Shown piece by piece: positions 1 to 42,347 of a DNA stretch of 64,000 bases. Both the position numbers and the translations under genes were made by a program. Within the stretch, counting starts at the first letter, position 1; each line of letters opens with the position of its first letter. The notes under the pieces were generated by a model that was not told the origin of the DNA, ran no database searches, and worked only from the letters and a program-made list of their open reading frames with translations. Location of the stretch: positions 5,178,741 through 5,242,740 of the forward strand of contig OZ037768.1 in assembly GCA_964035545.1 (NCBI GenBank), read 5' to 3'. This DNA is from Bugula neritina. Its lineage: Eukaryota; Animalia; Bryozoa.

Positions 1-1739
1 ATGGACGAAAATTTTTATTACAAAAATATTTTTGCTGTTACTAATAATTAGTATTTTATGGCTTTTCATTTAAAGATTAAGAAGCAGTATAAATTCTGCA
101 AACATAGCGCAATCAATGTTTTCACTTTCACCTGTAGTGGTCAATTACCAAATAATAGCACACTGTTGATTGCTGTGACTAGCACCCATTTGATGACTAC
201 CCATAATAGTTTGGTTATTATGAAGCAAATTGGTTTTTAAAATACTGCATACTAGAAGTTTGTATTAATTGAACTTATACTTATAAATTTATATTGTTTA
301 AAAGCTGCATTTAGATGTTTTTCCTCATTTAGGAGCTTCAACTTTTAGCAAACAACCACTTTGGTGACTCGCATCATCTCGTGATTTTTAGCAACCCGGA
401 AATTTTCTGTAGGATAAAGCAATGAGTAGAAAATGTTAGCTGATAGTACGCTTTCATTTTCTAATCAGCCAAATAGAGCAATCATAGAGCTATGTGATTG
501 GCCGAGTATTTTGGAGCTATTTTTTGCAGAAGTAATATTGCCAAAATCTCCAGTTTTCCTGGAGTATTATCTAAAGTTTTCACCAAGGATAAGCACGCTG
601 TTTTGAATTACTGTGAAACTGTATAGATATTTCTTAGTGTTTGAAAAATTTGAAGTTATAAAATTTGTAAGATTGTATGCTATATATGGAGTAATAAAGT
701 ACCTATCTAATAAAATGGAAACCTTATTCAAGTAAGTTCCAAATAATGTTATAAGACATGTACAGAAATAAGGGGCAATACTTTAAATAATATTTCCTTG
801 CAACATAATGTTGACGTATATTCTGGGGCTTTCTAATTATAACTGCACATCACTTCATAACTAGTACACATTTTACAACTTTGATTATCTCAGATTTTTT
901 GTTGGTTGGAAATGATTTGTTCTTATTGTTTGTTACCTGGCTCAACTGCTTATGACATTTAAAACCTATTTATTTGTTTTGTATCCACCGGAATGGAACA
1001 AACCAATTATTCCATTTCTGTAGCTGCACCCATAAGCTGGGTAATAATTACCTTCGGCAAATCATGGACACACAAGAATTATCTTCTTTTCTTGTCTCTT
1101 ATTGCTGTATTTGACTTGTCATTCCTGCTAATTTTGTAAGTTCTACATTATCGTGACGAAGCCTACTTTGTTATAGAAGCGATAATGACCACTCTCACAT
1201 AGCAAGTTGACCGTCACTATGTTATAAATAGCTTGACATTTATTATGGATTAACACTGCTTGCATTATGTAATTTCCATGTAGTTGGTCCACTCAAATCA
1301 TTTCAAAGAGTTAAATGAAGGCAAAGGAGTATAAATGAATAAAAAAATAGAGCAAATATAGTATATTACACTCTAATAAAATTAGCTACGGGTAGCAAAC
1401 AGTATTAATATTGCTAGTTTTGTTGTAGAGTTTTTATGTGTTTATGATTTATACGTGTGTTTGGTATGTATGTATTTTATAGCAATAATCAGTGTTAGTT
1501 GTTGATATGCATGTAATTAAGATACATTTAGGCGTAATAATTTCGTAGCGGAAAAGATGTATATGCAGACCAGAGTGTGTTGAGAAAACTGAAAAAGTCA
1601 TGCAAAATAACATTATTTCAGTATATTGACCTAAAATCCTCTTATGAAGTTCAAAGTAGAATAACTAGTGCAATTTTGGTGTCAAGTTAAATTAATGTTG
1701 CTACTGGGGCTAATAGTATATGTTCTGCTCTCAAGTAGA

Positions 1740-4700
1740 ATGCCTGCCAGGACCAGAACAAGTCCATGTGCTGTAGAGCCAGTTAGTCTCACCAATGTTC
1801 AAGAACCTCGGAATGTCTTGTTTGACACACTGCATCACAAAGCTCACCAGGTAAGCCCCGCCAACTCTGCTTTCTGTTTTGTGACTGTCTGAAAAATTTA
1901 TTTAATTTACAAACAATTGTAGTATTAGCTCGGTGCTCTGTAATTGAACATTTTAGTTTATTGTTTCTATATGTTATTTTTTTGCAATAAATTGCTAGTA
2001 CTAGTTTTAAATCATTACATTTATTTCCAACATTTGTAAAAATGTTTTATAATTGGCAGAATTGTATTGTTTTCTTGTAAATTTTCAGTAGTTATATTAA
2101 ATTTTTCTAATTGTTTCTCAAAAAGGACTATTTTAGTATCACAATATGTTATATAAAATTCGATGCACATATATTTTCGTAATAGGTAGACATGACTTCC
2201 ATGCATTATCAGGAAGTAGTTTCACTAATTTGATTGGTTTGTCAATCCTAACTTTTGATATGCATCTTATCTACTCTATACATACGCAAATTTTAAAAAG
2301 TTGTGTTCTGTGGCCTACTGCATGTTTTATATAATGATTGATGGCATAATTACTTGAAAATCCAATAGCCTGTTATTTCACACTAAATGGTAACAGCCTA
2401 ACTTCACCTAATTGTAATAAAATGCTAACAATTTTTCATTTTTTCCTGTGTAGAAAAAGATGTGCAAGTAACATGCAGCACAGTTTATAGAAATAAACTA
2501 AATTGGTAAAATGTTTAGCCTGCAGGTAAATTTTTTTTCTGTGTTCACATAAATACAACCAGGAGATTGACCTGCTGGTGGTATGTTTTAAGGCTGGAGC
2601 AGTCTGCTCAAACTCTGTCTGCCAAGGCTCCGTCTTACAACCAAAATCAGATACCAGCTCTCAGTTTGATGAGAAAGTAAACTTTGCAGACGTTCAGGAT
2701 TTCTATAATCAATATTTCACCTCCAGAAGCATCAGGTTTGCTATTGTTGTTGTATCACAAACTGTATGGCATAGAATTGGGGCCTGCTATGCCTAATCTT
2801 TGAACATAGAAGTAACATATGTGATGGTGATGAATTTTTTAAATTTTTAGTCACTTTAAAACCAAACTGTTTTACTGTTTCTCTAGAGGCCTTTGAGAAA
2901 TGCTGTACTAAAATGTACAAGTTTTGAACCTTACAAGAAAGACTTCTGCTTACTTATTATATATCTCCAAGCACTATTAAAAAGTTCTGTTCTAAACTTT
3001 TCAAGTTCTGATGTTTTCATATTAATTTTAAGTGAGGAAGATCAGATTAAAAGACTGGATGAAGTGATTGCATCAATAAAATCAAACAATCAATATGATA
3101 TGACCAAAGATGAGTTGGAGTTTGGAGTTACGACTGCTTGGAGGAATGCACCTAGATGTATTGGTAGAATTCAGTGGTCTAAATTAAAGGTCAGCTGTCT
3201 AATAACTGGGTATTAGAGAATTTAGCTTGTATTTAATTGAAAAGATTATTAGTTTTCAAAATGTGCTGAAAATTAGCATATATCCAGCTTTTTCTCCAAA
3301 AAGTAAATTGCAAGCTTCACAATTATTTAATTTTTTTTGTTACAACTGATGAAATATAATAAATATAATTTAAATCGTCACTATATTGCCATGTAATGAG
3401 AAACCTCTGTTTTTGCTCTGAATAGAAAAACAGTAAACGATGCTTCCTAACTTTACAATTCATTTTCAGCTTTTTGATGGCAGATGGATTCAGTCAACAA
3501 GAGAAATGTTTGAATTGATATGTGAGCATATAGAATATGCCACAAACTATGGAAACATCAGGTAAGCTATTCTGTGCAAAAATATAAACAAACTAAAATA
3601 AATGCAAAAAATGACTTGAAACCTTCAAAAAATAATACCTTTACTACTCCTGTTATATATCATCAAAATAATGTTTATGCACAGCTCAAGTGCACCATGT
3701 TTATTTTAGTGTTAATATATAATACTGATATTATGATATAATAGGGAAATTGTTTGCGGTGGAGTTATTTATATGTTTTATTTTAATTACAGAGCATATT
3801 ATAATGTAGTACAACATAATATTATATAGCATACTATTCACAGTTGTTTACTTTAGAATACTCTTGCCTTCTAGTTCTTGTTATACTATTAAAACTTAGT
3901 GTGTCAACACAGAAAATTCAAGCTTAGCCGGTTTTATCATTTTATGATATGTAATTCTATAAAATATTTTCTTACAATGGTTCCACAGTATTTTCTCCCC
4001 ATATGCAGTTTTAATTGTCCAAGGAAATACCTTCAATGAATATTTGCATACATATATTTAGATCTGCCATAGTTGTGTTCCCATCCGGACAATCTGGAGT
4101 AGAGTGTAGAATCTGGAATGGTGAATATATAAGCTATGCTGGATTTGAAGTCTCCCCTGGAGTAGTAGTTGGTGATCCTAACCATGTTGAGTTTACTAAG
4201 ATCTGCATACGACTGGGCTGGAATCCTCCAGTTTCAAGGTATTAACAACTCAGTCCTTGCAACTAACATTAATTAAAGAAGTAGGTCATTTTTCATTTCC
4301 TGGTTCTTACGCTATAATATCTGTGGCTACATTATTCATCTTTTAACCATATGCTGATATATTGCCCAGTAGTAAAATTAAATTGTTAAGGATAGCAAAT
4401 TTATGATTTATATATTGCCCAAACTCATCTATAGCTATATCTTTGCTATTTATGGGGGATTAGGTTGTGGTTGCATTATTTATAGCTTGGTCATATACTA
4501 AGAGTAGAACACTATACACTGCTAAGAGTTATACTATGATGGTCCAATGTTGAATTATAACTTGTTGAAAACTTTAGGGCCTTCACAGTTATCTGTCTTC
4601 TGCTATGGGCTAAAGTATGCTTCGAATGGGCAGTCATGATGAGACTAAAATATGTACTGAATTAGCAGTGCTTTGCAATTGCTAGTATTCAATATACATA

Positions 4701-7700
4701 CTAGCATACATAATTTATATAAGAAACTGTTCATAGTTGAAAATGTGTAAAGAAGTCACCTCTAAACACAGCCACTGTTATATGGCTGCAGAATTATTTG
4801 TTTACCACATAGGACAGACAATTCCATAACATAACTTTATAAATCAGTTCACCTCTAGCCAAACTTCACCTGTCTCATAACAATTCTTTTATTTATTTAT
4901 ATTTCTAACCTGGGCTAAATTAGTCTTCTGCATATTACATAAAAAATATACTAAATTGTGAAGTTTTATTGACCAACTCTGGAATTGTTAGAGTTGTCCA
5001 TAAGATTTTAAGTTGTCTATATTTTTGTTGAAAGATTCCAAGTTCTGCCTCTGGTACTACAGTATGGAGACAACAATCCAGACCTGTATGAAATCCCTAA
5101 GTCTTTGGTACTGGAGGTACAAATCTCTCACTCAAAGTAAGTTCATGTATTTGTTAAAGTGAACTGACCAATGATATATAATACTTAGTGTTATATGTCT
5201 ACATTAGTGTAGCTAAGTTTAATACAATCATTTCCATGAACAGATATCCAAAGTTTGATCAGCTGGGATTAAAATGGTTTGCTGTCCCTGCTGTGTGTAA
5301 CATGAGTTTAGACTGTGGAGGACAGATATATCCTGCCACGGGGTTTAATGGATGGTACATGTCTACAGAGATAGTGAGAGACTTCTGTGATTCAGGACGT
5401 TATAACCTTCTCAAGGTCAGTTGGTTGATGCCGAGTTATGTCTATGTTTTGTTTAAAAAAAGGGCATGTTTTAATGTCAAGGTCATTTATTTGCAGGCAG
5501 TTGCCACTAGCATGGAGATGGATACTTCCCAACCAGATATGTTTTGGAAAGACTTCTCAGCCACAGAACTGAATGTGGCAGTTGTTACTAGTTTTCAGGT
5601 GAAGAAAGCCACCAGATATTGAAACTAATTACCATAATATAATTCATGTAGTTCAACTAGCTGAAGCAACAGTTGGTAGCAGAAATAAATTAAGTTTATT
5701 TTTATTTATGTTTTCGAAAGTACAGGTATTAGAGAAGTGCCTTAATCACATGCATTATTCTTGTTTATAGAAATCAAACGTGACTATAACAGATCACCAC
5801 ACTGCCTCAGAAACATTCATGCATCATATTGAGAATGAGCAAATGTTACGAGGTGGTTGTCCAGCTGATTGGGTTTGGATTGTTCCACCACTAGGGGGCT
5901 CTTTACTACCGGTCTTTCACCAGGAAATGCTCAACTATAAGTTGAAACCCAGTTATGAATATCAGGTAAGGTTTGTGGAGCGCTGCATTCTATAATAAGT
6001 TATTTCAATATAATAACATGATTCTTTATGTTGCCAACTGAACCTAGTTTTCTAGTTCCTATTTATAAAACAGATTTATGGATTTAGGAAAAGGCATGGG
6101 TTGGATTCAATTGGAAAGGTGATCTGCGAAAAGGAAATCTTCGAAGAGAGAAGCTCACTTTCCGAAGTGTTGTGCGGTATTTATTTTTTATTTATTTTTT
6201 CTGAAGGTTTGGCTAAACTTTAAACGTGGTACTAAATATATTTCCCTTATAGATGTTTTGATCTACTTATTTTATTTTCATTGAAATACTAAGTTGTAAT
6301 TTTATTTTTAAGGAATAAAGTGCTATCTTCAGGAACTGAAGGTTTTCTTGCCAATGGTTTTTAAATCTCGATCTCTCGAAAACTTAACAGTTGATTTTAA
6401 TCTATACTCATTGGAACTGTTTAATTACAACAAACCTAATTCTTAAAAGCTTATGTGTAGTCCAACATCAGTTGTAGAGTTTTCTCTTTATACAATGAAA
6501 TGTGTAACAGCTGTTGTTGCATTTGATTTTCTAGATTGTTCTTTAAAGGCTCACATGCTGCAAATTCAACTTCAACATTCTTATTTTAAACAGAGTTGTT
6601 ATTTCCATAGTCAAAAATAATACTTATACTTTTCAGTGCAATGGTTGTTTGTTACATTCTGATGAAAAGCTCTTTAAAGGAGAGGAAACGTTGCACTATT
6701 ATTTATGCCACTGAAACTGGCAAATCAGAACGTTATGCATACAAGTTGCATCGTCAGTTCCATCAAGAATTCAATGTAGAGGTAGGCTGTGGTATTCTAA
6801 TACTGATTTAAATGCAGAATGTTAATATCTTGTTGGTTGAATGACCCGTTTGTTCTGTACTTCAGGTGAAATTAAAGTAAAAGCTGACACTCAATTTAAA
6901 GAGGTGATTTGTATAATCACTAAGAAAATTTGGGAAACTATTAGCATATCTTTATTGTGCGGTTCCCAAAGTGCTTTTAACTAGATTTAAATTAATAATA
7001 GCGTTTCATTTATTAATCTAGTAGAATAAATTTATTTATACTATAAGATCTAATAAAGTAACATTTTACATTATATCACTTCTTATACATTGTTGGACAG
7101 ATTTTAGTATATTATTATATTATATTAATACTAGAATACCCACATTCACAGTAACTATCCAGTTCAACATTCTGCCTATATTTTAGCTATTTAGTCATTG
7201 GAGTTGTCGTACTAATTTCTCGATATATACCACTGCTGAGTTGAAGCAGTATTATTATGCTGAGTTGAAGCAGTATTATTATGCTGAGCATATATTTACA
7301 GAGAGTAAACGTTCAGCAATGCATTGTAGGTATTCTCCATGGACAAGTATGATCTGACAAGGTTAGCATCTGAAACACTCCTCATTATTGTGACCAGTAC
7401 TTTTGGCAATGGAGAACCTCCTGCTAATGGAAAGGTATTATAAACTGTGCCAAGCATTGCGATTATAAATGTATTTAGGTATTTTCCTAGCTTTTGAGAC
7501 ATATTCACACTTGAGCTGAGCACTAACACTGAACCCCAATTGGTATATTTTATCTTTTACAGAAATTTGAGAAAATGTTAACAGATTTGACCAATAAGAG
7601 AATGTCTGGCTCCAGAGCACTTGCCCCACAGTAAGCTATTGGCATTATTTAACTTATCTAAATGAAGTATTATAATATTTTTGTTCAATTATTTATTGTT

Positions 7701-10700
7701 ATAAAAGGGCTAAAACGGCTACAGTGTGCTTGATGGTTATAAATTTATATTTTACAGATCATCAAATTGCAGGTAATGCTTTGTGCTATATTTTTTTGTG
7801 TATGAAGATGCGCTTGCAGCTAACACTTTTTCTATTTTGAAATATTCTAATGAGTTTTGCACTGCTAGAATGCTTTTGCTAGGCTCAATAATATTTTAGC
7901 TTTCTTAATATTAAAAATGTTGAAGCACAGGTGAAGGGGTTATTTTAATGGTAAAGGATTTTGAAGCATGCGAATTTATGTTAGAAACCTACAGTTTATT
8001 TACATGTTGTCCTTTTCCAGATACTCAGTGTTTGGACTTGGCTCTAGTGCGTATCCCAACTTCTGTGCCTTTGCTAAAAGAGTTGATGATTTACTCAATA
8101 AAATTGGTTTCAAGAGACTGTTGGAGCTGTACACTGCAGATGAGAAGAAGAACCAAGACCTGGCATTCAGAGAGTGGTCATTGGAAGCTTACTCAGTGAG
8201 TCTGTATTCCGTGTTTCGTCTCATACCATCCGCAGAGAGAGAACAATTTCTGCATACTTTACTTTATAGCTGTTATATTTATCTTCAGAGTGTGGTTGAG
8301 AATTTACTTCTTTAGTAAAAGGGTCCTTTTTGGTGCAAAAATCTTTCATGGATATGTCCGCACCTCTCTTGTTCTATTCTCTATTTTTTATATTAATGTG
8401 TTTATAGAAAACTTGTGCATATTTTGGAACATCAGGGAAAAAAGATGTCAATGGAAATGGGTTTAATGGCAGAGAAGTGGAAGGATACAGTCTTTGCCCA
8501 TCCATAGACTCCAGTTCAGTTGTGAAAGGTTGGGAGAGTTTGCTGAATGTTTTCATTTGTTACCTCTACTGTTAACTGGTTGTGTATTAATGCAGAATAA
8601 TGATTTGTTTACAGGTTTACAGCACATACACAAGAAGCTGATTTCTACTTGTAAAGCTGTATCTGTGGAATCTTTAGTATCTCCATATGCCAGGTAACTA
8701 TGGTTGTGTCATGTGGGAAGTAATAGAATACATTGATTCTGGTTTAGTATCTCCATATGCCAGGTAGCTATGGTTGTGTTAAAATAATAGAATACATTGA
8801 TTCTGGCGTAAAACTAATAAAATTAATAAATTAGCTTAGTATATTTATTTATTTTAAACTGATGGTGCGGAGATCGAAAATTTGCCTTTAGCAGTTTATG
8901 TTAGCATAGCAAATTTACTATAGGCCTACCATGTGATTTTCTTTAGCAAAGTTGTTTAACTGTTTTTACTCATTTTGAATAGCTCTGACGCCGTACTGGT
9001 GAAGTTCCAACACGACCAGTTGTTGTACTCTCCCGGAGACCATCTTGCCATTTTCCCAACAAATAGTAAAGACAAAGTTGAGAAATTATGTCAGAGTTGC
9101 ATCTTTGAAGACGGGATAGATTCCTATACCCCAGTATCAGTTACTTCTACTGAGAATGGTAAGTTACTTCTGTTATAATTATAACATAAATCATATAATA
9201 ACTTATGTTTGCCAACTCCTCTGCTATGTAGCTCACCAAATACTGTCTCTTTTAGTATCATCAAAACCTTAAGATTTTTTTAATCAATAGTAATATAATT
9301 GGTTCTGGTAGAATAGCTTTTGTGATATTGAGGTGTGAAACTGTCTAATAAAAATTGTGCTGTAAATGTATAAATTCTTATCTTCATGCTACCTTTCCCT
9401 TCCCCTATGTTGTAGCATCTGCTTATGCTGTACACATAACATTATATTAGTCTAAGTTAATGAGCTACTGTAATACTTACACAAGTTTATAGATCTGAAA
9501 TTTTTACTTTTTTCAAATCTGAATTCAATTTGTAGGCAATAAACATTATGTTCTCACCAGGTGTAATGTTAAGCAGCTATCTATATATATATGCTATTGT
9601 AGGTGTGATGTCAAGAATTCCACCAGCTACGATGTTCACTGCTTTGACTAACTACTTGGATATAGAGTGCACACCCAGACAGTGTGACCTGGAAGCCCTG
9701 CTACCTGTGTGTGAATGTGACGAGGATGAACGTCAGAAGCTTACTCACCTTTTGTTGGTATGTGCAACTGTAATAAGTGTTTTACATAAATTTGAGTTGT
9801 CTTCTAATAATTTCTTTCATAAAGCCACAAATAAAGTCATCTATAACATGTATGCTGTGGTTACTTCTTGTTTTTAAATCACACGGTTCATATGAAAGTA
9901 TTGCCATAACTTGATGTGTAGACATGGAAATTGTTTTTCACTCGGTGTATAATTTTACTGATTCAGTTAGTATAAAATGCTGCTTTTATTCCATTAACTA
10001 TCTATTTAGACATCATTTACCTCTATAGCTAAACAATATTGTGTTGTGATACACAAATCTGTAAAAAAATACTGGCAAGCCATACAAAATTACCCTACAT
10101 ATACTGACTTGCAAAGTAAACCATATTTAAAGTGTATTGCATTCGTAATTCCTAATGTCGTCGACTAGTGTAACAGCCTGAGCTAGATTGTTATTTGGGT
10201 TCAATGATGTCATGCTTCTATTCCTAGTAAAATTGACTATCACAAAAAAGTGCTCGAATTTTTCTTCTTTGTCTTTTCCAGGATTCAAATGTATACAACG
10301 CATGGGCCGAGCTAAAGCCATCTTGGGTAGACTTTGTCACAGAGTTCAGCAGTGTTCGTATTCCTGCAGGTTTCTATTTAACAGAACTACCAGTTCTCCA
10401 GCCTCGTTACTACAGTATCAGTAACTCTCCTTCTATGTATCCTGATCAAGTTCATCTCACTGTCGGTGTCCTGGAGTATCAAGTTGGTACAGGTAATTTC
10501 AACTGCCTTTTTATAACTAACCATTCAAACATGGTTTTTGCGTATTACATTATTTACAGCTATAATTTACAAAGCGTGAAGTTAATTCTTTGATTTGTGT
10601 TCGTTATATTGCAGTCTTAAGTGAGGTTTGTCTTTTTTCATTGTTGTCCGAGGTAGAAAACTTCATAATGATTTTATATATCATATTACTAGAACTATCA

Positions 10701-13164
10701 AATGTTTATACTTGATGGTGTTTTTATTTATTCGGTAGAGGTTTATAATATTCCTATATAATTGCTTTATTTTATCTTAGAATAGTTTCACAATGCATCT
10801 TCCAGTGATGTGTGCTATTCATTATTTTCAGCCTTCAACTTCTAGGGCAGTGTATTTTAGTTGGCATATGTGAAATGGTATGCATGTGCTGATTGTTAAC
10901 AGATTAAAAAGTCAAGAAACAGTGTTATTTCTAATCTAAAACATTCAACTATTACAGAAAATAGTGGAAGAATAAAGTTTGGGCTTTGTTCTACCATGTT
11001 GCAAAACCTGGCTGCAGGGGAGCAAGTTCACGCTTACGTTAACAGGTGAGCCAGGCTCCAGATACACCCACACAATGCATGTTAATCTCGTTAGCTTTAA
11101 ATTATTTTCTGCCATCATAACTAGATACATATGAGTATATTAAAGAAGTATAAAATAACACTTAGGACTCAATCATCGTATATAGACATGCCTGCTCTGA
11201 ATTTAATTATGACTTGAAAACGCATTTTGAATATTGCATGTTTGTTTATGGAATACTAAGAATTATATATCAAAAAATCTAGTCAATTTTTTACCGATGT
11301 TCATACTAATTTTTTATGTTTTGAGCACGAGTAATGTTTCTATGATGGTGTTTTATCTTTTATAAAAGCTTTAGGGTGGTTTGAAAGTTGAAGATTTTCA
11401 TTTAAGTTGCAGCTTCAACTTGTTGAAGTAGTACAATACACTCATCATATGTGTTTATAAGTTCTATTATATGTTGTGTCTATGCTATAAATAACCGGGT
11501 ATGCTATAATTAGTCTGGTATGCTATAATTAGCCTGGGGTGTTATAATTAGTCTGGTATATGATTTGCTCATATTTAGATCTCCAGGGTTTCACCTTCCA
11601 TCTTCTCTCTCTCATCATGTAATAATGGTAGGAGCTGGTAGCGGTATGGCACCATTTAGAGGTTTCTGGCAGCACAGAGGTTCCATGAAGGGAACATATG
11701 GTAAGCCAACCATACCGGTTCAATGCAGTTGTTCTATTCAACTATCATACAAATAAACATATAGAAATACACTATGCTTAATGTAATGTCATGGCGCAAT
11801 CTGGTGTCTCAAAATTTGAAACTCCCTATAATGAGCAATTCTCACCAGCCTGGGTTACTTTTCACAATTTTCGTAAATTTTCATTTAGGATGTAGTACAG
11901 CTCTCTGATTCAGTCAATCTTTCTATAAATTAGAAGTTTAATGATGGAGATTCCGTTGGTAACTTATGAATTAGTTGCGGGTATTTTGGTCTAAAAAAAT
12001 AAGGCTGTATTTAGGGGCAGGAGAACTACATCTCTTCCAAGGATGCAGAACAAAGTCTTCACTTCTACATGCTGAAGAAATCAACGGAGCTGTGAATTCT
12101 AAAGTCATCACTTCTAGTGTGACAGCTTTCTCCAGAGAGAAGCACCTTGCAAAGGTGAAAATCATTTTTGTATCTGATTAAATTAAATTTTTCCGGGACA
12201 AACTAGCTTCCACTTCATGTATCTCAATAGAAATTGAAATATTTCATGCATGAGAAAACAACTATGAGGTTATTATCCTTGTAGTTCTTTTATAGTTGTC
12301 AGTTGTCCTAATTCTAGTTATGCCTTAGACTTTAGAGCATATTTATGCTTTGGATTTATAAGCAGTAATCTGCAACCTTTATATATGCTATCCCAGTGAC
12401 CCTGAAGTTTATTTAGTTTATAATAGCCTTGGCTTTCATTACATATTTTGGTTTGGGGTACGGGTTGAAATTCTGACGAAAAAATATGTTCTTTTACTAC
12501 ATTTTCTATTTAGAACACAGGTTTTCCCAATTCCATTACTACACCTTCCTCATCTAACTGCAGGTTAACACACTAAACTAAACCAATGTGATTGTAGCAT
12601 CATATTAACCTCCAATTGTTAAGTAACCTAAGGTTCTGATGAGTTTGCTCGGGCTACTTCGGATGTACCTGCAATGTGCTTAGGTGTCAAACTAGAAGTT
12701 TGACCACAACGCATATTCATTAGTCAATGGCTTACACAAGAAATGACTTGCAAATAAAACACGGCTATAAAACCTCAATATTCACATTTCAAATAATTAA
12801 AACTAAATTACAGGATTTCATCTGATTTGAATTTCTAATTTCTACTTTATGTACGATCTAAACAATATACCCTTGACTTTGCTCTAAACTTTAACAAGTA
12901 CTTTCTCCAACACAGGCCTATGTCCAAGATAAACTACTGGAGTGTAGAGAGTTAATAGAGGAACTGCTTTTAAAAAAGAAAGCTCATTTCTATGTGTGTG
13001 GAGATATCAAGATGGCTATCGGTGTGTCAAAGGCAGTGAGCACTATACTAGCTGGCAGCACTAGAAATGGTGATATGACAGCATCTGATGGAGAACTGGA
13101 TTATGTGGAAATAATGAAACAAGAAGGACGTTATCATGAAGATATATTTGCTGTACTCGTTTAG
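1740..13164 (+). CDS. NOS: Nitric oxide synthase, tandem copy A (about 1062 aa with the micro-exon)
   Basis: Hand-spliced exons: 1740-1850, 2593-2735, 3033-3189, 3470-3561, 4062-4238, 5035-5136, 5244-5415, 5497-5598, 5771-5965, 6088-6176, 6637-6781, 7330-7434, 7563-7630, [7758-7772 candidate micro-exon], 8021-8195, 8408-8528, 8615-8693, 8983-9158, 9603-9757, 10282-10492, 10958-11045, 11579-11700, 12015-12154, 12916-13164. All introns are GT-AG with matching phases. Motifs: DTLHHK, Zn CSNSVC, heme [116 protein letters not shown]. Confidence 0.96.
7235..7288. repeat. Short tandem duplication (about 23-bp unit TGCTGAGTTGAAGCAGTATTATTA, 2+ copies)
   Basis: Read directly in intron 11 of copy A. 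Confidence 0.85.
7758..7772 (+). CDS. Candidate 15-nt micro-exon of NOS copy A
   Basis: ttttacag|ATCATCAAATTGCAG|gtaatg. It is symmetric phase 2-2 and yields ...[15 protein letters not shown], restoring the usual Arg before Y/F-S-V-F-G. 68+15 = 83 nt equals the length of the equivalent single exon in copy B. Confidence 0.6.
8673..8806 (+). repeat. 70-bp tandem duplication spanning the exon 16 end and donor of NOS copy A
   Basis: TTTAGTATCTCCATATGCCAGGTA.CTATGGTTGTGT...TAATAGAATACATTGATTCTGG occurs at 8673 and again at 8743. Confidence 0.93.
11481..11558. repeat. Degenerate tandem repeat (about 20-bp unit ATGCTATAATTAGTCTGGT, 4 copies)
   Basis: Read directly, just upstream of the exon 21 acceptor of copy A. 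Confidence 0.8.
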
Positions 13165-19597: not shown

Positions 19598-21742
19598 AAC
19601 GGTATTTGTCATCTAATTTTATCACAGTGTTGACTTTTACAGTAAATTAAAGATAAATTTTATATTTCTCTTGTTATCTAATTGTTAAAATTAAATACCA
19701 AATGGTAACATGAAATTGAATACTGAATTAGACAAAATAAATACCGATTAATTGTAATTGAAAGAGTTAAGATCAGCTGACAGAATATGTTGCTGGTGAT
19801 GTGAAATATAAATATTTCTGCCATTCTGATGCACTAAAAATTTACAAATTTTATCTGGTGCAGCAAAAATCACAGAATTGTAGATAAATTTGATGCAGTA
19901 ACCTCTCATTTGGAGTATAATTTTTTTACTGTCTAATATAAATATGCACTTTTCAAGACACAAATGTGCTTATTGTTATATTAGATTCCATTTTATTTTC
20001 TTAAATTTCTGATTAAAAACGTATTGTTCTACTTGCATATTATATTAATCATTATGAAGGTTTTAAATTTATTTATTTAGTTTTTAGTATTTTTATATTT
20101 GTTATATTCTGCAAGTTAATACACTGTATTTATTAAAATTAAGAAAATATATTTTATACTTTGATTAAGCTAATTAAATCTACGCATTAAAACATAGTGC
20201 AAAATATATACAACAGGTAGGATAATAATATCGTAATGTTAAAATAGCTATTACAAACGCAGCAGATCAATCCCAAGTACCAGGAAGCAATATTTTTATT
20301 TATTGCCAGTATAATAACAATACATATGTAAAATAATAAATAATTTAAACTCAAACTATTGACTCAAGAATAATCGTCCACATAGTTTCAATCATTAGGT
20401 ACAACATTTTTTCAACAGGTATGAGACCATTTTTTTTAATTTAATTGTTTTTGAAATTTTCATTGTTTTCAGAGTTGTGTATGCAAGCATAGCACTTATT
20501 CAATGATACATTTGCACACTGTTATACTGTTATAGCCATATTTCCTTTTGGCATCAAAGCTATTCATATGACAATTTTGACTTTAAAGGCAAGGTCATGT
20601 TAATGAGCTACCCATTGACATGGGCAAAAAACAAGATCACCGAGTAGGTTGAATTTTAAATATTTATAAATTATTTATTCAGTAGATTTTCAATGGTGGA
20701 ATATTTGGTAGATAAATGTTTAGATGATATGTCAACAACCACAGTGCCTGTAGGTGGTCATAAATGGGTAGAGCCATGATCTGTTATTGCACCTGCAATG
20801 TTGCTATCCAAATGACCGTATCTCCATGCATGTATCAAATAACATGTACAAAACACACAGCATGAGTCTGGACAATATGGTTTTGGTTAATATAAATAAT
20901 ACTGTTAGTCTGTTGTAAGTTACTTGCTGCGACAGCACTGCAGTGACGGCATCATTAAATCAGCAGGGCATGTCACAAGGCTGCATAACTTGCTAACCTA
21001 GTGGCTGATAAGGTTTCACGTGTGTGTGGTGGTTGACCTATATGTCGTTCAACGACCTTCATATCAAAGGACCGCAATACCAGTAGATTCGCGTAGCCCA
21101 TTTGGATAGCTCATGGCACATTCACAACCATGCAGTCTGATGACCCCAATACTGCCCTTATTATCATGCTGCTACATTATAGTATATTATAGTATTATTA
21201 TGTTATGCAATATTATAACCATTCATTTTATAAACATATGGTAAAGGTACCTGCATAGGTATCTTAAGATTACACAAATTAAGATAACACTGAAATTAAT
21301 AAAATAAGTATTGCAAATAGTAATAGTATATTGCCATAAATTTGTTCAAATAAAAATTCACACTATATGAAAAAGTTGATTTTTAATAAACTTATTTGAG
21401 TAGCAGAATATGGGTCTTTCAGTTAAATTGTTTTATAAAGAAGATAGTGGCATGTACCATGATTAACAAAATCAACTTCATTTCATTATTATAACACACC
21501 TAGTGAAGTTCTAAAATTTAGTAGTTCTGTCCTAGTTTATACCTTTTGTATTTCTCACTTAATTTTTTTTAAAAAGGTGCAAATTTACAATAAATTAAGT
21601 AGGTCATGCAGTAAAAATTAATGCTATACACTATGCCATGGGTGTATATACTACTCTCTTATATATAGACACACTGTAACAGTTGCATACACACAGAAAT
21701 AGAGAATTTATACACTATTAAATATATTTAAGTTATTTTAGG

Positions 21743-24700
21743 ATGGCGACTGAGCTCAAGTCAGACAAGATTGCCCGAGAGCCGGTGCTGCTCACCAACG
21801 TGCAGGATTCTAACCTCGTGCTATTCGACACTCTGCATCATAAGGGACACCAGGTGAGTCAGCGTCTTCTTTAAAAGTAGATATATTTATGTATATTATA
21901 CATATATGCATATACGTATACATATGCTACATATACATATACGTATACATATGCTACGTATACGTATACATATACATAAAAATTATAAGAATCAAATTTT
22001 TAGGTGAATTATTATGTACATAATATAATTACAGTTACACTGATGGTGTAGTATATGCTAGTATACTGCATGTATATTATGTATTCTCTGCATCTCTTGT
22101 AGGTAGATGATACCTGCTGTCAAACCTCTCTGTGCCAAGGCTCCATCATGCAACCTAAAGCTATGATACGACCTCAGCCAGGCATTGGTGTGAATATGGG
22201 AGAAGTTGAAGATTTCTACAAGCAATATTTCACTGCCAAGGATGTTAAGTAAGTATTGCACAGGCTCCTGCAGGATGATCTACTGGATGATTGTGATGAA
22301 AGATGTAGTACTAAGTTAGCTTGTATGCTCATGTGTCAACGAGTAGTATATAATTTGACTGATATAGAGTATATAATAGCATGCAGAGCTAATTTCACCT
22401 GCTTAGTTGCTATCTACATAATTTCAACAAAGTTATTACATGACTAATAAATATATTTTAAGTTGAATAAGCATTATAAAAAACCATTTCTGTATGTTTC
22501 AAGTGAGGAAGACCAAGCTAAGAGAATGGCAGAAGTGGAGGCGTCAATCAAGTCAAGCAATAAATATGACATGACGGCCGATGAACTAGAATTCGGCTCT
22601 AGAACTGCCTGGAGGAATGCACCACGTTGCATTGGACGAATCCAGTGGTCTAGACTTAAAGTACAAAAACTTATTTCAATTTGTCTGAACCAAATTTACT
22701 GACACGAAATCTTAATTCAAAAATAGCATAATTTATATAGCGATATATGCATAATTAATCATCAAGTTATATCTTAGCTATGTTTCATTTGATTTTCATA
22801 ATTGTCTCCTCTTTAGTTCTTTGATGGGCGAGATGTGAAGTCAACCAAGGACATGTTCGACAAGATCTGTGAGCAAATAGAGTATGGCACCAATAATGGA
22901 AACATCAGGCATGTACAGACAATCTTACTGGTTTGCAACATAACATAATGGATCTGGTACTAGTACTGGTACTGGTACTGGTATCTGGTACTCGGCAATT
23001 TGATTGTTGTCTTTTTTTAATACAAGTTCATTATTCAGAAAATAAGAAATATTCCAAATTTACTATTTTTAAAATATAATAACAGTTTGAGAAAATTCCA
23101 GATAAGAATATAATAGAGATGGTGGTTTCGTAAACTAATAGTTGCACTGAAATACTTATTGCAATTTTGAACAATAAAGTACTTGTTTCATAAAAAGTTT
23201 TGTTGGTGATTGCTTTAAATAGTATAAACTGTCACTTTAAATTGTATAGTGCGGCAGTTTTATAGTATATTAACCATTTCCAACTCACTTGTCACAACAA
23301 AATTATTTTTTCCCACCCTGTAATTTACCATAATTATTGTCATTTGTTATTCAACATTGTTTAATAGGTCTGCCATAGTTGTGTTCCCATCCAGACAATC
23401 TGGGGTAGAGTGTAGAATCTGGAACGGTGAATATATAAGCTATGCTGGATTTGAAGTCTCACCTGGAGTAGTAGTTGGTGATCCTAACCATGTTGAGTTT
23501 ACTAAGATCTGCATACGACTGGGCTGGAATCCTCCAGTTTCAAGGTTTGTAAACAAGTTTCCTTCGAGTTAATCATTCAGATTTCTTAGTTTAGATTCCA
23601 GTTTAGTCGACTTCTTTTACTTGTCAGGGTTGTGTTTTCTTACGTAATCAGCATTGTTAAATTTGTAATGTAATAATTAATCAGATGGTTTAAAAGTTAG
23701 CAAAAGTATTAAATAAAATAATATGCTTCTCTATTCGTCTCAAAAGTTGATAGTTGCTCTCACAGTGCTTACTAGTGTGGTACAAGAGCAAGCTGTCCAC
23801 TTTACAGTTTGCAATTCAGCCATTGGTTTTACTTACTAAGCTACAATGGCTTCTTTTTTGCCATTCCACTTTTTTTTCTATTTGAAAGAAATGTGTGCAC
23901 TTTACAATTTTGAAGGTTCCAAGTGCTGCCTCTGGTACTACAGTATGGAGACAACAATCCCGACTTGTATGAAATTCCAGAGTCTTTAGTACTGGAGGTA
24001 CAAATCTCTCACTCAAAGTAAGCTTATTTATTTGTTGAAGTAAAGTATTAACCAATGATCTTGGAATATGCATGCTTTAAAATGCCTCATATTTAGTTTA
24101 ATGAAATTGTTTGTATGGACAGATATCCAAAGTTTGATCGACTGGGATTAAAATGGTTTGCTGTCCCTGCTGTGTGCAACATGGGTATGGACTGTGGGGG
24201 TCAGTATTATCCTGCTACGGGGTTTAATGGATGGTACATGTCTACAGAGATAGTGAGAGACTTCTGCGATCCTGCCCGTTATGACCTTCTCAAGGTCAGC
24301 CAGTTCTGTTGCTTCTTATTTTTCAACTTTCCACCATATAGCACAATTCAATTAACAACATTCATAGTGACTGATAAAACTCTTTCATAAAATAATATAC
24401 AGTTGCATAATGATCGCTGAGCAAACCAATTAGAAGGTCTGATGCATTCAGAATGGTTAACTTGGTTAGAGTTCAGCAAGACTAAGAATGTCTAAATACT
24501 ACTTTCAGGATATCGCCACTAGCATGGATATGGACACCACAAAACCTGCTATCTTTTGGAAAGAGTTTGCAGCTACTGAGTTGAACGTGGCAGTGGTTAC
24601 AAGTTTTCAGGTAATGGCTGAACAACGACAGCAGTTTTATAAATTTTTTAAGCTTTATGAACACCTGAATTGCTGATTATAGTATTTTTAATGTTCAGAA

Positions 24701-27700
24701 AACTACTTGCTGAATGCTATAGCAAGTTTTGCATATCTTGATGTGATAATATAGGTCTCAGTGTTTAGTATAGATATTACCTTGAAGAAAGAGAATTTAC
24801 CATTTCCTGCCTTTAAGATGCTAACTAGATGACTTCTTTGCAAAAAAGTGTTTTTCACATATTATGTTGATCTAAAATAAAGTACCATATTATAGAAATC
24901 AAACGTGACTATAACAGATCACCACACCGCCTCAGAAACATTCATGCATCATATTGAGAATGAGCAAATGTTACGAGGGGGTTGTCCAGCTGACTGGGTC
25001 TGGGTTGTTCCACCACTAGGGGGTTCTTTGCTACCCGTCTTTCACCAGGAAATGCTCAACTATAAGTTGAAACCAAGCTACGAATATCAGGTAAAGAATA
25101 CATTTGACAACACTGTATTATTTTGGTGTACACGCAGCAGACACTAATAACTTTATTGCATGATTGTATAGATGGCAGGAATCTGTAGGTAATTAAACTA
25201 ATAATGTGTTTGTAGACTAAGGCGTGGGTGAGGTTCATGTGGAAAGGTTCTGTACAAGGGAAGGCGAGACCAAAGATGCTTTCATTTCGAAGTATCAACA
25301 GGTTTGATGGTTTTGTGTATGACATACATGCTGACATATATGCTGACACATATACTGACACTTATATTGACATACATGCTGACATATATACTGAATAATA
25401 ATCAATATTTATTAAGTTATTTTTGAACCTGCAGTCCTGTTTTTATATAGCAATAGCCGTGTATACTTACAGAGCAATGATGCTTTGCGGGGGTATAATG
25501 AAAGCTGCCCTAAGCAAGAGAAGATACTGCACCATCCTGTATGCCACGGAGACGGGCATCTCTGAAGGCTACGCTAACAAACTTCAACGTATATTTGGCC
25601 AGGCTTTTCATGTTGAGGTGAATCTAACGCTGTTCATGATTTTTTGTGTAGTTATATGCTATACTATGTACATTATTTACATGCAAAGTTGATGTCTAAA
25701 AATTTTAGAAAATATTTTATCTATTATTTAGTGTGCACACGCTTACACAAAATTAGCTATTTCAATTTTTCTCAAATATTTAGGATTATTTTTAACTGCT
25801 CATGCCATGTTAACACACTTTTAAGGAAAATGATTTATTTAGCCAATGTGTCAAAAACATTGATTCTTAACAAAATTCACTTCCCAATGGCTGTCTTATT
25901 AAACCCTCATGCACATACATGTAATATATAAGTATTGTCTTCAGGGTAAAATTCTTTTTTATTCAGAAGTTTAGAATATCTTGCTGGTGCTAATAATGTG
26001 TAGTTGCTGTCTTTAACTGGTCCCATTAATTTGTAGGTGCTGTCTATGGACATGTATGACGTGTCAAGGTTGGGAGCCGAGGAGCTGCTGTTCATTGTAA
26101 CCAGTACATTTGGTAATGGTGAAGCTCCAGAGAACGGAAAGGTATTGTATTCGGAGAGTGAAATTTCAAGTGATTTATTTTTCTGTAGTACTGCTCTATC
26201 TATAGCACAAGACTTTACATCTGTGAAATAAAGCAAAACCAAATTCCACTTTAGAATTGAAACCCAAATTAAGCCAGAGTTCACTCATTTACATGGTAGA
26301 GCTATGTTTAATTGTTTTATATAAAATCATGACATTTTACTTTTTGATATGTTGCTCCTAGTATTAAATTACACTTGGATAAAACATATCATTGCTGCTT
26401 TGAATAGTAGTTTTGTTTGCATTTTATTTGTATGTCTAAACGTTTTATAATGGCAAAAGTTAGTTATGCTTCGACTATATATACGCCATACAGATTATAT
26501 ACATGTAAATAACTAACTTTACTTTCATCTTATAGTCATTTGAGAAGAACTTGATCAAGTTTGTTGAAAAAATCACTTCTGGGAGCAAAGATTCAAACGA
26601 AACTGAAAATGGACCCTTGTGAGTTTCTTTAAAAAAACTGTTTATAATGATCTTTTGGATTTTTTGTCTCATCTTCACCAGAGGAAATATCACATTTCAT
26701 GCCTAGCTGTAGATTGGCAAAAATAGGGTTATTAGAGTGACACAGTTATCAATATTAGTCAGTGCAAAAACTAGTGGTTTTAAGCTGAGTACAATGTGAT
26801 GTGTGATAAATTATTTTTCAAGTGCGAGGGGGTGTCTAAATCTGGAAAAGTATGCCCATTGTGACATACCAGAGTACATGGGTGTTGCTGTATTTACCAT
26901 TGTAATCATCATAGCAGACCACTGATGCTTTTTAATGTAATGAGCATGATTTAGAATAATATGAAAAACTCATAGTTTATGCAGACACTTGCTGACAGCT
27001 GTCACAATGGTGTTTTGCAGGTTTTCAGTGTTTGGACTTGGCTCCAGTGCATATCCCAACTTCTGTGCCTTTGCTAAAAGAGTTGATGATTTGCTGAACA
27101 AACTTGGGATGAAAAGGTTATCGGACATACAAACTGCAGATGAGAAGAAGAACCAAGACCTGGCATTTAGAGAATGGTCAACTAAAGTGTACACGGTTTG
27201 TCATCAGTTCAACGCTTCTGCATTTATGAGTAGTAGAAGTAGTCAAACATTATGTATAAAAAGAGGCAAAGCATTGTTTAGCAAATTCAATAGGCGTGTT
27301 AAAAAACTATCCACAGTTCTCATACTTGGTGACTACTCTAACTGAAAACAGATACAGTGTTGGGCACTCCTAGAATTTCGAAATTATTTAGTAAAGGGTG
27401 ATGGTAGAGTAATATATACAGTATAATACATATAATCTTCTTGCAAATGTTTAGCAACCATGGTTCATATAAAGGCAGGTTGCATAACACTAAAAAAATG
27501 TCTGCTATCAAATATTTGCAATGGCAACACACATGAAAAGTTTTTATATTGGCAATTTATTTAAAGCTGTGATATTTCTGCAGAAGGTTTTCTTGTTGCA
27601 TACAGGCTACAAGTTATGGCATTTGCAAAGAAACTGTCTAACATTGTGCTTACCTTTGAGAGTCTGATATTCCCTGAGGGAGAATGATATCCTCAGAAAA

Positions 27701-30700: not shown

Positions 30701-30906
30701 AGGAACTGCTTTTGAAAAAGAAAGCTCATTTCTATGTGTGTGGAGATATCAAGATGGCTATCGGTGTGTCAAAGGCAGTGAGCACTATACTAGCTGGCAG
30801 CACTAGAAATGGTGATATGACAGCATCTGATGGAGAACTGGATTATGTGGAAATAATGAAACAAGAAGGACGTTATCATGAAGATATATTTGCTGTACTC
30901 GTTTAG
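21743..30906 (+). CDS. NOS: Nitric oxide synthase, tandem copy B (about 1059 aa)
   Basis: Exons: 21743-21853, 22103-22248, 22504-22660, 22817-22908 (GC donor), 23368-23544, 23916-24017, 24123-24294, 24509-24610, 24896-25090, 25216-25301, 25473-25617, 26037-26141, 26536-26618, 27021-27195, 27756-27861, 27999-28077, 28232-28413, 28824-28978, 29471-29681, 29834-29921, 30038-30159, 30412-30551, 30658-30906. Phases match copy A and most exon lengths are identical. Same motif set (Zn CQTSLC). No frameshift seen. Confidence 0.96.
25320..25394. repeat. 12-bp tandem repeat (TGACATAYATRC, about 6 copies)
   Basis: Read directly in intron 10 of copy B. Confidence 0.85.
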
Positions 30907-36056: not shown

Positions 36057-36106
36057 ATCTTACTGAAAGAAGGTATTTAATAACTTCACTGCGAGCAAAA
36101 GTTATA

Positions 36107-36426
36107 GTTAGCAACCACCTGTCTATAGCTAGCAACCACCTGTCTATAGCTAGCAACCACCTGCCTATATCTAGCAACCACCTGCCTATAGCTAACAACC
36201 ACCTGTCTATAGCTAGCAACCACCTGTCTAGAGCTAGCAATCACCTGTCTATATCTAGCAACCACCTGTCTATAGCTAGCAACCACCTGTCTATATCTAG
36301 CAACCACCTGTCTATAGCTAACAACCACCTGTCTAGAGCTAGCAATCACCTGTCTATATCTAGCAACCACCTGTCTATAGCTAGCAACCACCTGTCTATA
36401 TCTAGCAACCACCTGTCTATAGCTAG
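36107..36426. repeat. 21-bp minisatellite, about 15 copies (AGCTAGCAACCACCTGTCTAT)
   Basis: The tandem units can be read directly. Variant units 7-10 recur as units 12-15. Confidence 0.97.
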
Positions 36427-41778: not shown

Positions 41779-42347
41779 TGCAAAAGATATGCAGAAATTC
41801 GTTCATTCTGCACTACAAATCCAGCTGAGTGGGCTGATGGTATAGTAAAGTACTAATTTAATCAGAATGTACCCAGTTTCTCACACTCTGCATAATAATG
41901 TTCACATAACATATTGAAAAAATGTAATAGGACTTTGATAGCCTTGTTTTTAAGTATTTGAAATAATTGTTGAAGTCAATCACTTTGCTGTCAACAGTCA
42001 TGAATTGGTGATCATTTTTGCATTAAGGACACTTTCGGATTCTCTAGGATTCCCGTGAATTGCGTGGAATGAAGTTTGATGAAGTATTTCTGTATCCCAT
42101 TTTATAGTGGATCAATGAATTGATTTATTTAAATATATTCATACTGTCCGAAAACTACATTTTATATGAGTGAAAAGAAAATTGCTAATTTATTAAATTT
42201 AAATTGTAGCTGAAGCTACCCTAGATATTAATTTTCATATGTTCTGTTTACTTGAACTTTTAAATTTATTGCATTAGAAATAGAAATGCTATTCATTCAA
42301 ACCATACGAGACAGTAAATGTTGACAGTGTATATATTATATTTTAGA

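What the first reader, a model, noticed from the sequence alone, without database searches (positions are those of the whole stretch)
4062..5415. Remodelled substrate pocket in all three NOS copies: possibly not a standard L-arginine enzyme
Seen: exon 5 reads WNGEY(I/V)SYAGF and exon 7 reads KWFAVPAV in all copies (B 23368-24294, C 45207-46431). Established: canonical NOS has WNSQL(I)RYAGY and KWY(A/G)LPAV. Mouse iNOS Gln257, Tyr341, Tyr367 and Asp376 form the network around the L-Arg carboxylate, with Arg260 in the second shell. Here Q257 becomes E, L258 Y, R260 S and Y341 F. The guanidinium anchors E371/W366, V346, the heme Cys and the pterin residues R375/W455/W457/F470 are kept. R260S alone occurs in other invertebrate NOS; the combination with Q-to-E and Y-to-F is the odd part. 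Inference: the carboxylate subsite has become more acidic and lost H-bond donors. That could favour a guanidine without a free carboxylate (agmatine, Arg-amide or peptidyl Arg, an alkylguanidine metabolite), pointing to a NOS repurposed for a different NO source or for natural-product N-oxidation.
Basis: partly seen in the sequence, partly recalled or inferred. Interest (0 to 1): 0.85.

Follow-up and report, generated by a model that had tools for sequence, protein, structure and literature searches.

The report
Bryozoan nitric oxide synthase pocket variant
The three tandem nitric oxide synthase genes of the bryozoan Bugula neritina have a glutamate where almost every other such enzyme has a substrate-contacting glutamine, but a reverse acid-to-amide change sits nearby and the rest of the arginine site is intact, so they most likely still make NO from arginine.

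Summary
All three copies read WNGEY(I/V)SYAGF and KWFAVPAV.

Only one of the four "odd" residues is unusual.
- R260S is the commonest state in my sample (S 63, R 55 of 165).
- Y341F is common (46 of 264 other proteins), for example in all Hymenoptera, Mytilus, Haliotis, Sepia and Owenia.
- Q257E is unique. Q is found in 163 of 165 proteins and in 77 of 79 metagenome loci. E occurs only here and in three other bryozoan-like lineages.

New result: E257 always comes with a reverse change. The Asp/Glu of the "RFD" motif (mouse D297) is present in 151 of 151 proteins but is Gln in every E257 lineage in which that exon was recovered.

The other residues that bind the alpha-amino-acid end (Y367, E371, D376, R382) are kept. 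Omega is about 0.14. These are the only NOS genes found in the 216-Mb assembly. Published B. neritina "NOS" qPCR primers map to copy B.

Best reading: a lineage-specific variant of an ordinary L-arginine NOS. A change of substrate is not excluded (about 0.1). The scan did not find this on other DNA. The neighbouring one-residue deletion is a separate note on this window.

The parts
1665..13161 (+). NOS copy A: full-length gene with oxygenase, FMN, FAD and NADPH domains
   Evidence: Exon-by-exon tblastn to Owenia NOS P0190. Pfam PF02898, PF00258 and PF00667 on single exons. All signature motifs present.
21722..30903 (+). NOS copy B: full-length gene and the transcribed copy measured as 'NOS' in the literature
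   Evidence: The qPCR primers of PMC13191283 Table S1 map to 21832-21851 (1 mismatch) and 22176-22195 (0 mismatches), across an intron.
42318..53039 (+). NOS copy C: full-length gene
4062..4238 (+). Copy A exon 5. E257 codon GAA at 4123-4125, Y258 at 4126-4128, S260 at 4132-4134, F264 at 4144-4146, P268 at 4156-4158
   Evidence: PF02898 positions 107-163.
5035..5136 (+). Copy A exon 6. Q at the position of the near-invariant RFD aspartate (mouse D297), codon CAA at 5039-5041
5244..5415 (+). Copy A exon 7. F341 codon TTT at 5278-5280. Y367, E371, R375, D376 and R382 are kept. One residue is missing in TEI-VRD
23368..23544 (+). Copy B exon 5 (E257 codon at 23429-23431)
23914..24018 (+). Copy B exon 6 coding block (Q297 codon at 23920-23922)
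24123..24294 (+). Copy B exon 7 (F341 codon at 24157-24159)
45207..45383 (+). Copy C exon 5 (E257 codon at 45268-45270)
46062..46166 (+). Copy C exon 6 coding block (Q297 codon at 46068-46070)
46260..46431 (+). Copy C exon 7 (F341 codon at 46294-46296)

Best explanation
These are three functional, tandemly duplicated, full-length nitric oxide synthases of the bryozoan Bugula neritina. They belong to a lineage-specific 'E-type' NOS clade. In that clade the near-invariant Gln257 has become Glu, and the near-invariant acidic residue of the RFD motif (mouse iNOS Asp297) has become Gln. I read this as a compensated amide/acid exchange that keeps the polar network and net charge of the carboxylate end of the substrate pocket (inferred). 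I therefore expect the enzymes still to bind L-arginine through Glu371/Trp366 at the guanidinium and Tyr367/Asp376/Arg382 at the amino-acid end, and to make NO for the NO/cGMP pathway that controls larval settlement. Y341F and R260S are ordinary invertebrate states and add nothing unusual. What is shown: the residues, their rarity, their co-occurrence, purifying selection, sole-NOS status, and transcription of copy B. What is inferred: that residues 257 and 297 interact, and that L-arginine remains the substrate.
For: 1. Family membership and intact catalytic apparatus.
2. Position 257 is Q in 163 of 165 proteins and never E, and Q in 77 of 79 metagenome loci.
3. E257 is conserved in four distinct lineages: Bugula A/B/C, P0267 (= L026/L104), P0268 (= L114) and P0269 (= L115).
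4. Position 297 is D or E in 151 of 151 proteins that cover both sites, and D in all six Q-type relatives (L001, L002, L003, L028, L029, L034). It is Q in Bugula A/B/C, L026/L104 and L114.
5. Y367, E371, D376 and R382 are invariant in the E-type sequences. PMC6120233 states that the Tyr588 (= Tyr367) hydroxyl H-bonds the alpha-COOH of L-Arg and matters for substrate recognition.
6. Precedent for an acid/amide exchange at this carboxylate: nNOS Asp597 (protonated) and eNOS Asn368 both H-bond the L-Arg alpha-carboxylate in identical networks (PMC10343299).
7. Omega is 0.13-0.16 for all pairs of copies.
8. Every PF02898 match in the 216-Mb assembly lies in this window. An sGC-type HNOB domain is present elsewhere in the genome.
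9. In B. neritina the NOS inhibitors SMIS and aminoguanidine and the sGC inhibitor ODQ change larval settlement, and the 'NOS' transcript measured there is copy B (PMC13191283).
10. Y341F and R260S are common.
Against: - No biochemical data exist for any E-type NOS.
- Spatial contact between residues 257 and 297 was not tested; no coordinates or model were available here.
- If they do interact, Glu257 would have no N-H to donate to the substrate carboxylate, so some loss of L-Arg affinity is plausible.
- The inhibitors used on Bugula larvae (SMIS, aminoguanidine) are small guanidinium-site ligands and say nothing about the carboxylate subsite.
- The clade also carries other rare changes near the site (Y264F, D268P, L356Q, the missing residue after Ile372). 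The pocket as a whole may therefore behave differently.
Confidence: 0.6

Rival explanations
1. L-arginine is still the substrate, but Q257E, together with Y341F and the loss of Arg260, weakens binding of the carboxylate. That would raise Km or change analogue and inhibitor selectivity. The change could be tolerated, or used, because marine invertebrates hold large free arginine pools. On this reading the variant is a kinetic tuning and not a neutral swap.
For: Gln257 is almost invariant, which implies a functional cost for most replacements. Three H-bond donors at the carboxylate end differ from mammalian NOS. The state has been held by selection in four lineages. High free arginine in marine invertebrates is general knowledge and was not tested here.
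Against: The reciprocal D297Q change could compensate. Y341F and R260S occur in many ordinary NOS. There are no kinetic data.
Confidence: 0.2
2. One reading: the E-type pocket prefers a guanidine without a free alpha-carboxylate (agmatine, arginine amide, peptidyl-Arg or an alkylguanidine). The enzyme would have been repurposed for another NO source or for N-oxidation of a metabolite.
For: A carboxylate side chain at 257 would repel a substrate carboxylate unless it is protonated or paired. E257 is unique to this clade. Mammalian NOS can accommodate alkylguanidines, whose tails curl toward Gln478 and Val567 (PMC6120233).
Against: - Y367, D376 and R382, which bind the amino-acid end, stay invariant.
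- D297Q could offset the added charge.
- These are the only NOS genes found in an animal with NO/cGMP signalling that is sensitive to NOS inhibitors (PMC13191283).
- The neighbours are a GPCR and a retroelement fragment, not biosynthetic genes.
- F341, part of the argument, is ordinary.
Confidence: 0.12
3. The copies are decaying or are assembly artefacts (haplotigs), and the odd residues reflect relaxed constraint.
For: Many otherwise conserved positions differ in these genes.
Against: - The reading frames are open through all recognised exons, with ag/gt borders at the exons examined (5 and 7).
- Omega is 0.13-0.16.
- Synonymous divergence is saturated in several exons, so the copies are old paralogues and not haplotigs.
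- Copy B is transcribed.
- The same states are kept in other species.
Confidence: 0.03

Closest known systems
Canonical metazoan NOS (mouse iNOS, rat nNOS, bovine eNOS oxygenase domains, e.g. PDB 1NOD, 1OM4)
   Same: Same Pfam domain and the same order of oxygenase, FMN, FAD and NADPH domains. Heme Cys, V346, W366, Y367, E371, R375, D376, R382, W455, W457 and F470 are present.
   Different: Q257E, L258Y, Y264F, D268P and D297Q, plus one residue missing after Ile372. R260S and Y341F also differ from mammals, but not from many invertebrates.
Invertebrate NOS with Ser260 and Phe341 (Hymenoptera such as Apis and Bombus; Mytilus, Haliotis, Sepia, Lottia, Owenia, Tubulanus)
   Same: They share KWF..PAV and, in many cases, S at position 260. 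M. coruscus larvae raise NO on L-arginine treatment (abstract of PMC9957169). That is organism-level evidence only.
   Different: All of them keep Gln257 and Asp297.
Q-type relatives from marine metagenomes (L001, L028, L029, L034, L042/L043; probably other bryozoans)
   Same: They form the sister clade in a distance tree (E plus Q clade in 299 of 300 resamplings). They share the missing residue (TEI-MRD), Cys before RIWN, Gly before FNGW, and an aromatic residue at 258.
   Different: They keep Q257, Y264, D297 and Y341, and mostly D268 (E in L001). This shows that the E-type states arose inside this lineage.
The nNOS Asp597 / eNOS Asn368 isoform difference
   Same: This is a natural acid/amide alternation at a residue that H-bonds the L-Arg alpha-carboxylate. 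L-Arg binding networks are described as identical in both isoforms (PMC10343299). It is a precedent for Gln-to-Glu being compatible with L-Arg.
   Different: It concerns a different residue (376 in iNOS numbering, which is Asp here). It changes the selectivity of cationic dipeptide inhibitors, so an effect of E257 on analogue selectivity is possible.

Membership tests
Nitric oxide synthase, oxygenase domain (Pfam PF02898) | Significant match to the family profile over the whole domain | tested here: met
   Exon-wise matches cover profile positions 22-360 of 362 in each of the three copies, all over the curated cut-off. Single exons score 52-90 bits.
Nitric oxide synthase, oxygenase domain (Pfam PF02898) | Proximal heme thiolate Cys in [10 protein letters not shown] | tested here: met
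   WRNAPRC at 3139-3159, 22610-22630 and 44705-44725.
Nitric oxide synthase, oxygenase domain (Pfam PF02898) | Guanidinium anchors Glu371 and Trp366, and Val346 over the heme | tested here: met
   GWYMSTEI and KWFAVPAV in all copies.
Nitric oxide synthase, oxygenase domain (Pfam PF02898) | Residues binding the alpha-amino-acid end: Tyr367, Asp376 (or Asn), Arg382, Gln257 | tested here: inconclusive
   Tyr367, Asp376 and Arg382 are present. Gln257 is replaced by Glu (0 of 165 in the reference set) and is paired with D297Q.
Nitric oxide synthase, oxygenase domain (Pfam PF02898) | Pterin-site residues Arg375, Trp455, Trp457, Phe470 | tested here: met
   All are present. Arg375 lies one residue closer to Glu371 because of the missing residue.
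Full-length eukaryotic NOS (oxygenase fused to a P450-reductase-like domain) | Flavodoxin-like FMN, FAD-binding and NADPH-binding modules downstream in the same gene | tested here: met
   PF00258 (48.7 bits) and PF00667 (62.1 bits) on single exons. PF00175 gave only a weak match, 17 bits and below its cut-off, on the last exon alone. Collinear alignment to Owenia NOS runs through residue about 1115.
Full-length eukaryotic NOS | Catalysis of L-arginine to citrulline plus NO | not testable with these tools
   Indirect evidence only: these are the only NOS genes found in the genome, copy B is the transcript assayed as NOS, and NOS and sGC inhibitors affect larvae (PMC13191283).

The most novel reading that the evidence does not exclude
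The bryozoan E-type NOS clade has a rebuilt carboxylate subsite (E257/Q297/F264/F341 plus a shortened Glu371-Arg375 segment) that shifts specificity away from free L-arginine. The preferred substrate would be a guanidine without a free alpha-carboxylate or with extra positive charge. That would make it the first animal NOS with a different physiological substrate.
Probability: 0.12. Interest if true: 0.8.

Novelty: new variant of a known kind. Interest (0 to 1): 0.45.

Why it matters
Gln257 (Gln478 in nNOS) is treated as an invariant first-shell residue in NOS enzymology and inhibitor design. Here nature has replaced it with Glu, kept the replacement under selection in several species, and changed a second near-invariant residue in the opposite direction. 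In Bugula this variant is also the only NOS found in the genome.

This gives a ready-made experiment on what the Gln does. It asks whether an acid/amide pair exchange is neutral for L-Arg, or whether it changes affinity and analogue selectivity. It also flags Asp297 as a possible hidden partner of the substrate pocket.

There is a practical side too. B. neritina is a model fouling organism whose settlement is studied with NOS inhibitors. Arginine-analogue inhibitors that rely on the carboxylate subsite may behave differently on this enzyme.

Tried and rejected
- **No structural model.** The oxygenase domain was therefore not folded, no dimer with heme, BH4 or ligand was modelled, and no full-length query of the Bugula protein was sent. 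All searches were by single exon reference. One query (window:5245-5598) was an unaltered stop-free stretch that reads through the short intron between exons 7 and 8.
- **Blank search.** The search for homologous proteins with exon 5 alone found nothing. That tool sees only proteins of similar length, so this says nothing.
- **No read-level RNA evidence.** Expression evidence comes from published primers only.
- **Literature not available.**
  - The PNAS 2001 paper on the exon 8/9 subdomain of iNOS (PMC56971) and Yang et al. 2018 (doi 10.1242/jeb.167478) are not held.
  - A text search for Asp297, Asp303, Asp518 or Asp289 in NOS papers found nothing relevant.
  - A search for the ENA assembly accessions found no paper.
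- **Rejected: pseudogenes or relaxed constraint.** Omega is 0.13-0.16 and the frames are intact.
- **Rejected: haplotig artefact.** dS is saturated in several exons.
- **Rejected: a hidden canonical NOS elsewhere in the genome.** No PF02898 match lies outside the window.
- **Rejected: a natural-product gene cluster.** The neighbours are a GPCR and a retroelement fragment.
Full report
**What is there.** The window holds three co-oriented, full-length NOS genes on the + strand. Copy A runs from about 1665 to 13161, copy B from about 21722 to 30903 and copy C from about 42318 to 53039. Each has the heme-Cys motif, the oxygenase core and the FMN, FAD and NADPH modules. The genome is that of the bryozoan Bugula neritina. 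Earlier scan notes say so. I checked it independently: the published B. neritina NOS qPCR primers (PMC13191283, Table S1) match copy B at 21832-21851 (one mismatch) and 22176-22195 (no mismatch), in two different exons. Copy B is therefore transcribed and spliced, and it is the gene reported as "NOS" in that paper.

**Observation.** Exon 5 of copy A (4062-4238) reads ...[20 protein letters not shown]... and exon 7 (5244-5415) reads ...[14 protein letters not shown]...[14 protein letters not shown].... Alignment to solved iNOS chains confirms the equivalences Q257E, L258Y, R260S and Y341F.

The three copies are not independent, however. Synonymous divergence is a mosaic. It is 0.08-0.19 in exon 5 and 0.12-0.40 in exons 6, 7 and 9, but above 1 or saturated in exons 3 (A/C versus B), 4, 8 and the first FMN exon. 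This is the pattern of old paralogues whose core exons are homogenised by gene conversion. Summed over 14 coding blocks, omega is 0.13-0.16 for every pair, so all three are under purifying selection.

**How unusual are the four residues?** I collected NOS proteins in two ways. One was a full HMMER scan of 1.84 billion representatives, queried with the exon 7-8 stretch. The other was a search with the Mytilus NOS P0006 found by that scan. I then aligned every protein to exon 5 and exon 7 separately.

| Position | Counts | Verdict |
|---|---|---|
| 257 | Q 163, L 1 (a Ptychodera paralogue), K 1, E 0, of 165 | E is unique |
| 260 | S 63, R 55, G 17 and others | S is the modal state |
| 341 | Y 202, F 47 (one is the Bugula-like fragment P0001), H 10, of 265 | F is common |
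| 264 | Y 163, H 2, F 1 | F is rare |
| 258 | L 150, F 8, I 4, V 2, M 1, Y 1 | Y is rare |

The F341 proteins include every hymenopteran NOS in the set (Apis, Bombus, ants, wasps), Mytilus, Haliotis, Lottia, Sepia, Stramonita, Owenia and Tubulanus. All of them have Q257. Q257E is the real rarity.

**Relatives.** A pattern scan of metagenome contigs with an exon-5 alignment gave 78 loci. Of the 79 exon-5 matches in all fetched loci, 77 have Q257. The two exceptions, L026 and L027, encode the same NOS. It is 60-83% identical to copy A exon by exon. It reads [24 protein letters not shown] and TEIVRD, and it has no intron between exons 4 and 5.

A search with that open frame found two more lineages. 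P0268 reads [16 protein letters not shown] and P0269 reads [16 protein letters not shown].

P0267 (the L026 type) occurs on 17 contigs. Many are labelled BRYA16-1, from samples SAMN048497xx and runs SRR34014xx. I take BRYA16-1 to be the plastic-debris metagenomes of Bryant et al. 2016, in which 30-90% of eukaryotic rRNA reads were bryozoan (PMC5069773). That link is an inference from the label.

Other contigs (L001, L002, L003, L028, L029, L034, L042/L043) share several derived features with Bugula: the missing residue after Ile372, Cys before RIWN, and Gly before FNGW. They nevertheless keep Q257 and Y341.

I built a distance tree from 150 sites of exons 5, 6 and 7, summed per exon with no joined sequence. 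It groups Bugula A/B/C with L026 in 300 of 300 resamplings. It groups that "E-type" clade with the "Q-type" contigs L001 and L029 in 299 of 300. E257 is therefore a derived state, fixed inside a bryozoan-like lineage and kept in at least four members.

I looked for positions that are at least 85% conserved in the reference set but differ in Bugula, and then asked which of these are shared by L026 but not by the Q-type relatives. Besides Q257E, Y264F and D268P, one position stands out. The acidic residue of the RFD(V/I)LP motif in exon 6 is mouse iNOS Asp297 by my count, anchored on Q257 and Y341.
- It is D in 148 and E in 3 of the 151 proteins that cover both sites.
- It is D in all six Q-type relatives.
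- It is Q in Bugula A/B/C (codons at 5039, 23920 and 46068), in L026/L104 and in L114.

The state is thus (Gln257, Asp/Glu297) everywhere except this clade, where it is (Glu257, Gln297), with no intermediate seen. This looks like a compensated exchange of an interacting amide/acid pair, and on that reading the summed charge of the two residues does not change. That weakens the premise that the subsite became more acidic. I could not test whether the two side chains are close in space.

**What it most likely does.** The guanidinium site (E371, W366, V346) is unchanged in all E-type sequences. So are three of the four residues that hold the amino-acid end (Y367, D376, R382). PMC6120233 notes that the Tyr588 (= Tyr367) hydroxyl H-bonds the alpha-COOH of L-Arg and that mutating it strongly alters substrate binding. 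Strict retention of these residues argues that an alpha-amino-acid end is still bound. An acid at this carboxylate is not unprecedented either. nNOS Asp597 (protonated) and eNOS Asn368 make the same H-bond to the L-Arg carboxylate (PMC10343299).

All PF02898 matches in the 216-Mb assembly fall inside this window, so Bugula appears to have no other NOS. An sGC-type HNOB domain exists elsewhere in the genome. NOS inhibitors (SMIS, aminoguanidine) and the sGC inhibitor ODQ alter B. neritina larval settlement (PMC13191283). Those inhibitors bind the guanidinium site, so they do not probe the carboxylate subsite. The gene neighbours are a rhodopsin-type GPCR and a reverse-transcriptase fragment, which is not a biosynthetic context.

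I therefore put the odds as follows:

| Reading | Probability |
|---|---|
| Ordinary L-Arg NOS with a compensated pocket swap | about 0.6 |
| L-Arg NOS with altered affinity or selectivity | about 0.2 |
| Changed physiological substrate | about 0.12 |

**Limits.**
- There is no enzymology for this clade.
- The organisms behind the metagenome contigs are inferred, not identified.
- Residue numbers for mouse iNOS and the structural roles of Gln257, Tyr341, Arg260 and the other pocket residues rest on established literature recalled from memory, apart from what PMC6120233 and PMC10343299 state.

Noticed in passing
window 3049-13161 vs 22520-30903 vs 44615-53039: Synonymous divergence between the three NOS copies is a mosaic. 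It is near saturation in exons 3, 4, 8 and the first FMN exon, but 0.08-0.4 in exons 5-7 and 9, the FAD exons and the last exon (which is 100% identical in protein). This is the pattern expected from repeated gene conversion of the catalytic core among old tandem paralogues. A groups with C in some exons, and B groups with C in others (FMN exons).
   Followed up: partly
window 5365-5385 (and copies B, C); proteins P0127, P0098, P0126, P0019, P0099, P0084: The one-residue shortening between Glu371 and Arg375 (TEI-xRD) is not confined to bryozoans. It also occurs in several long (530-1176 aa) NOS proteins of other, unidentified lineages and in many fragments (28 of 257 sequences scored). The Q-type relatives L001 and L029 also have it, so it predates Q257E.
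   Followed up: partly
window 4087-4089: Copy A alone has Gly (FPSG) where copies B and C and 142 of 150 reference NOS have Arg (FPQR/FPSR). Copies A and B have Val where copy C and 146 of 147 references have Thr (SAITVF).
   Followed up: no
window 56593-57870 (+): A single-exon open frame of 426 aa downstream of copy C matches rhodopsin-family GPCRs (PF00001, E 3.7e-12).
   Followed up: no
window 35396-35782 (-) and 36044-36477: A reverse-transcriptase fragment (PF00078, E 3.3e-11) lies between copies B and C. Next to it are internally repeated open frames on both strands (36058-36240 and 36349-36477).
   Followed up: no
L026:1084-1347 (also L104, L107): In the E-type NOS from the plastic-debris metagenomes, exons 4 and 5 are fused into one open frame (no intron). 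In L104 part of exon 9 appears twice (2592-2666 and 2768-2938).
   Followed up: no
protein P0203 (Ptychodera flava NOS1-like) and P0117: These are the only other departures from Gln257 in 165 proteins. The hemichordate paralogue reads WNALMIRYAGY (Leu). A 419-aa protein of unknown origin reads WNSKLVRYAGY (Lys). P0203 keeps Asp297; P0117 did not align over exon 6, so its residue there is unknown.
   Followed up: no
L004 (JGI 3300002729), 729-1113: A 1.4-kb metagenome contig carries exons 6-7 that are 97-98% identical in protein to copy A, with differences (RYSLLK for RYNLLK; LPLILQ for LPLVLQ). It is probably a sibling species or strain of B. neritina sequenced along with a symbiont metagenome.
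   Followed up: no
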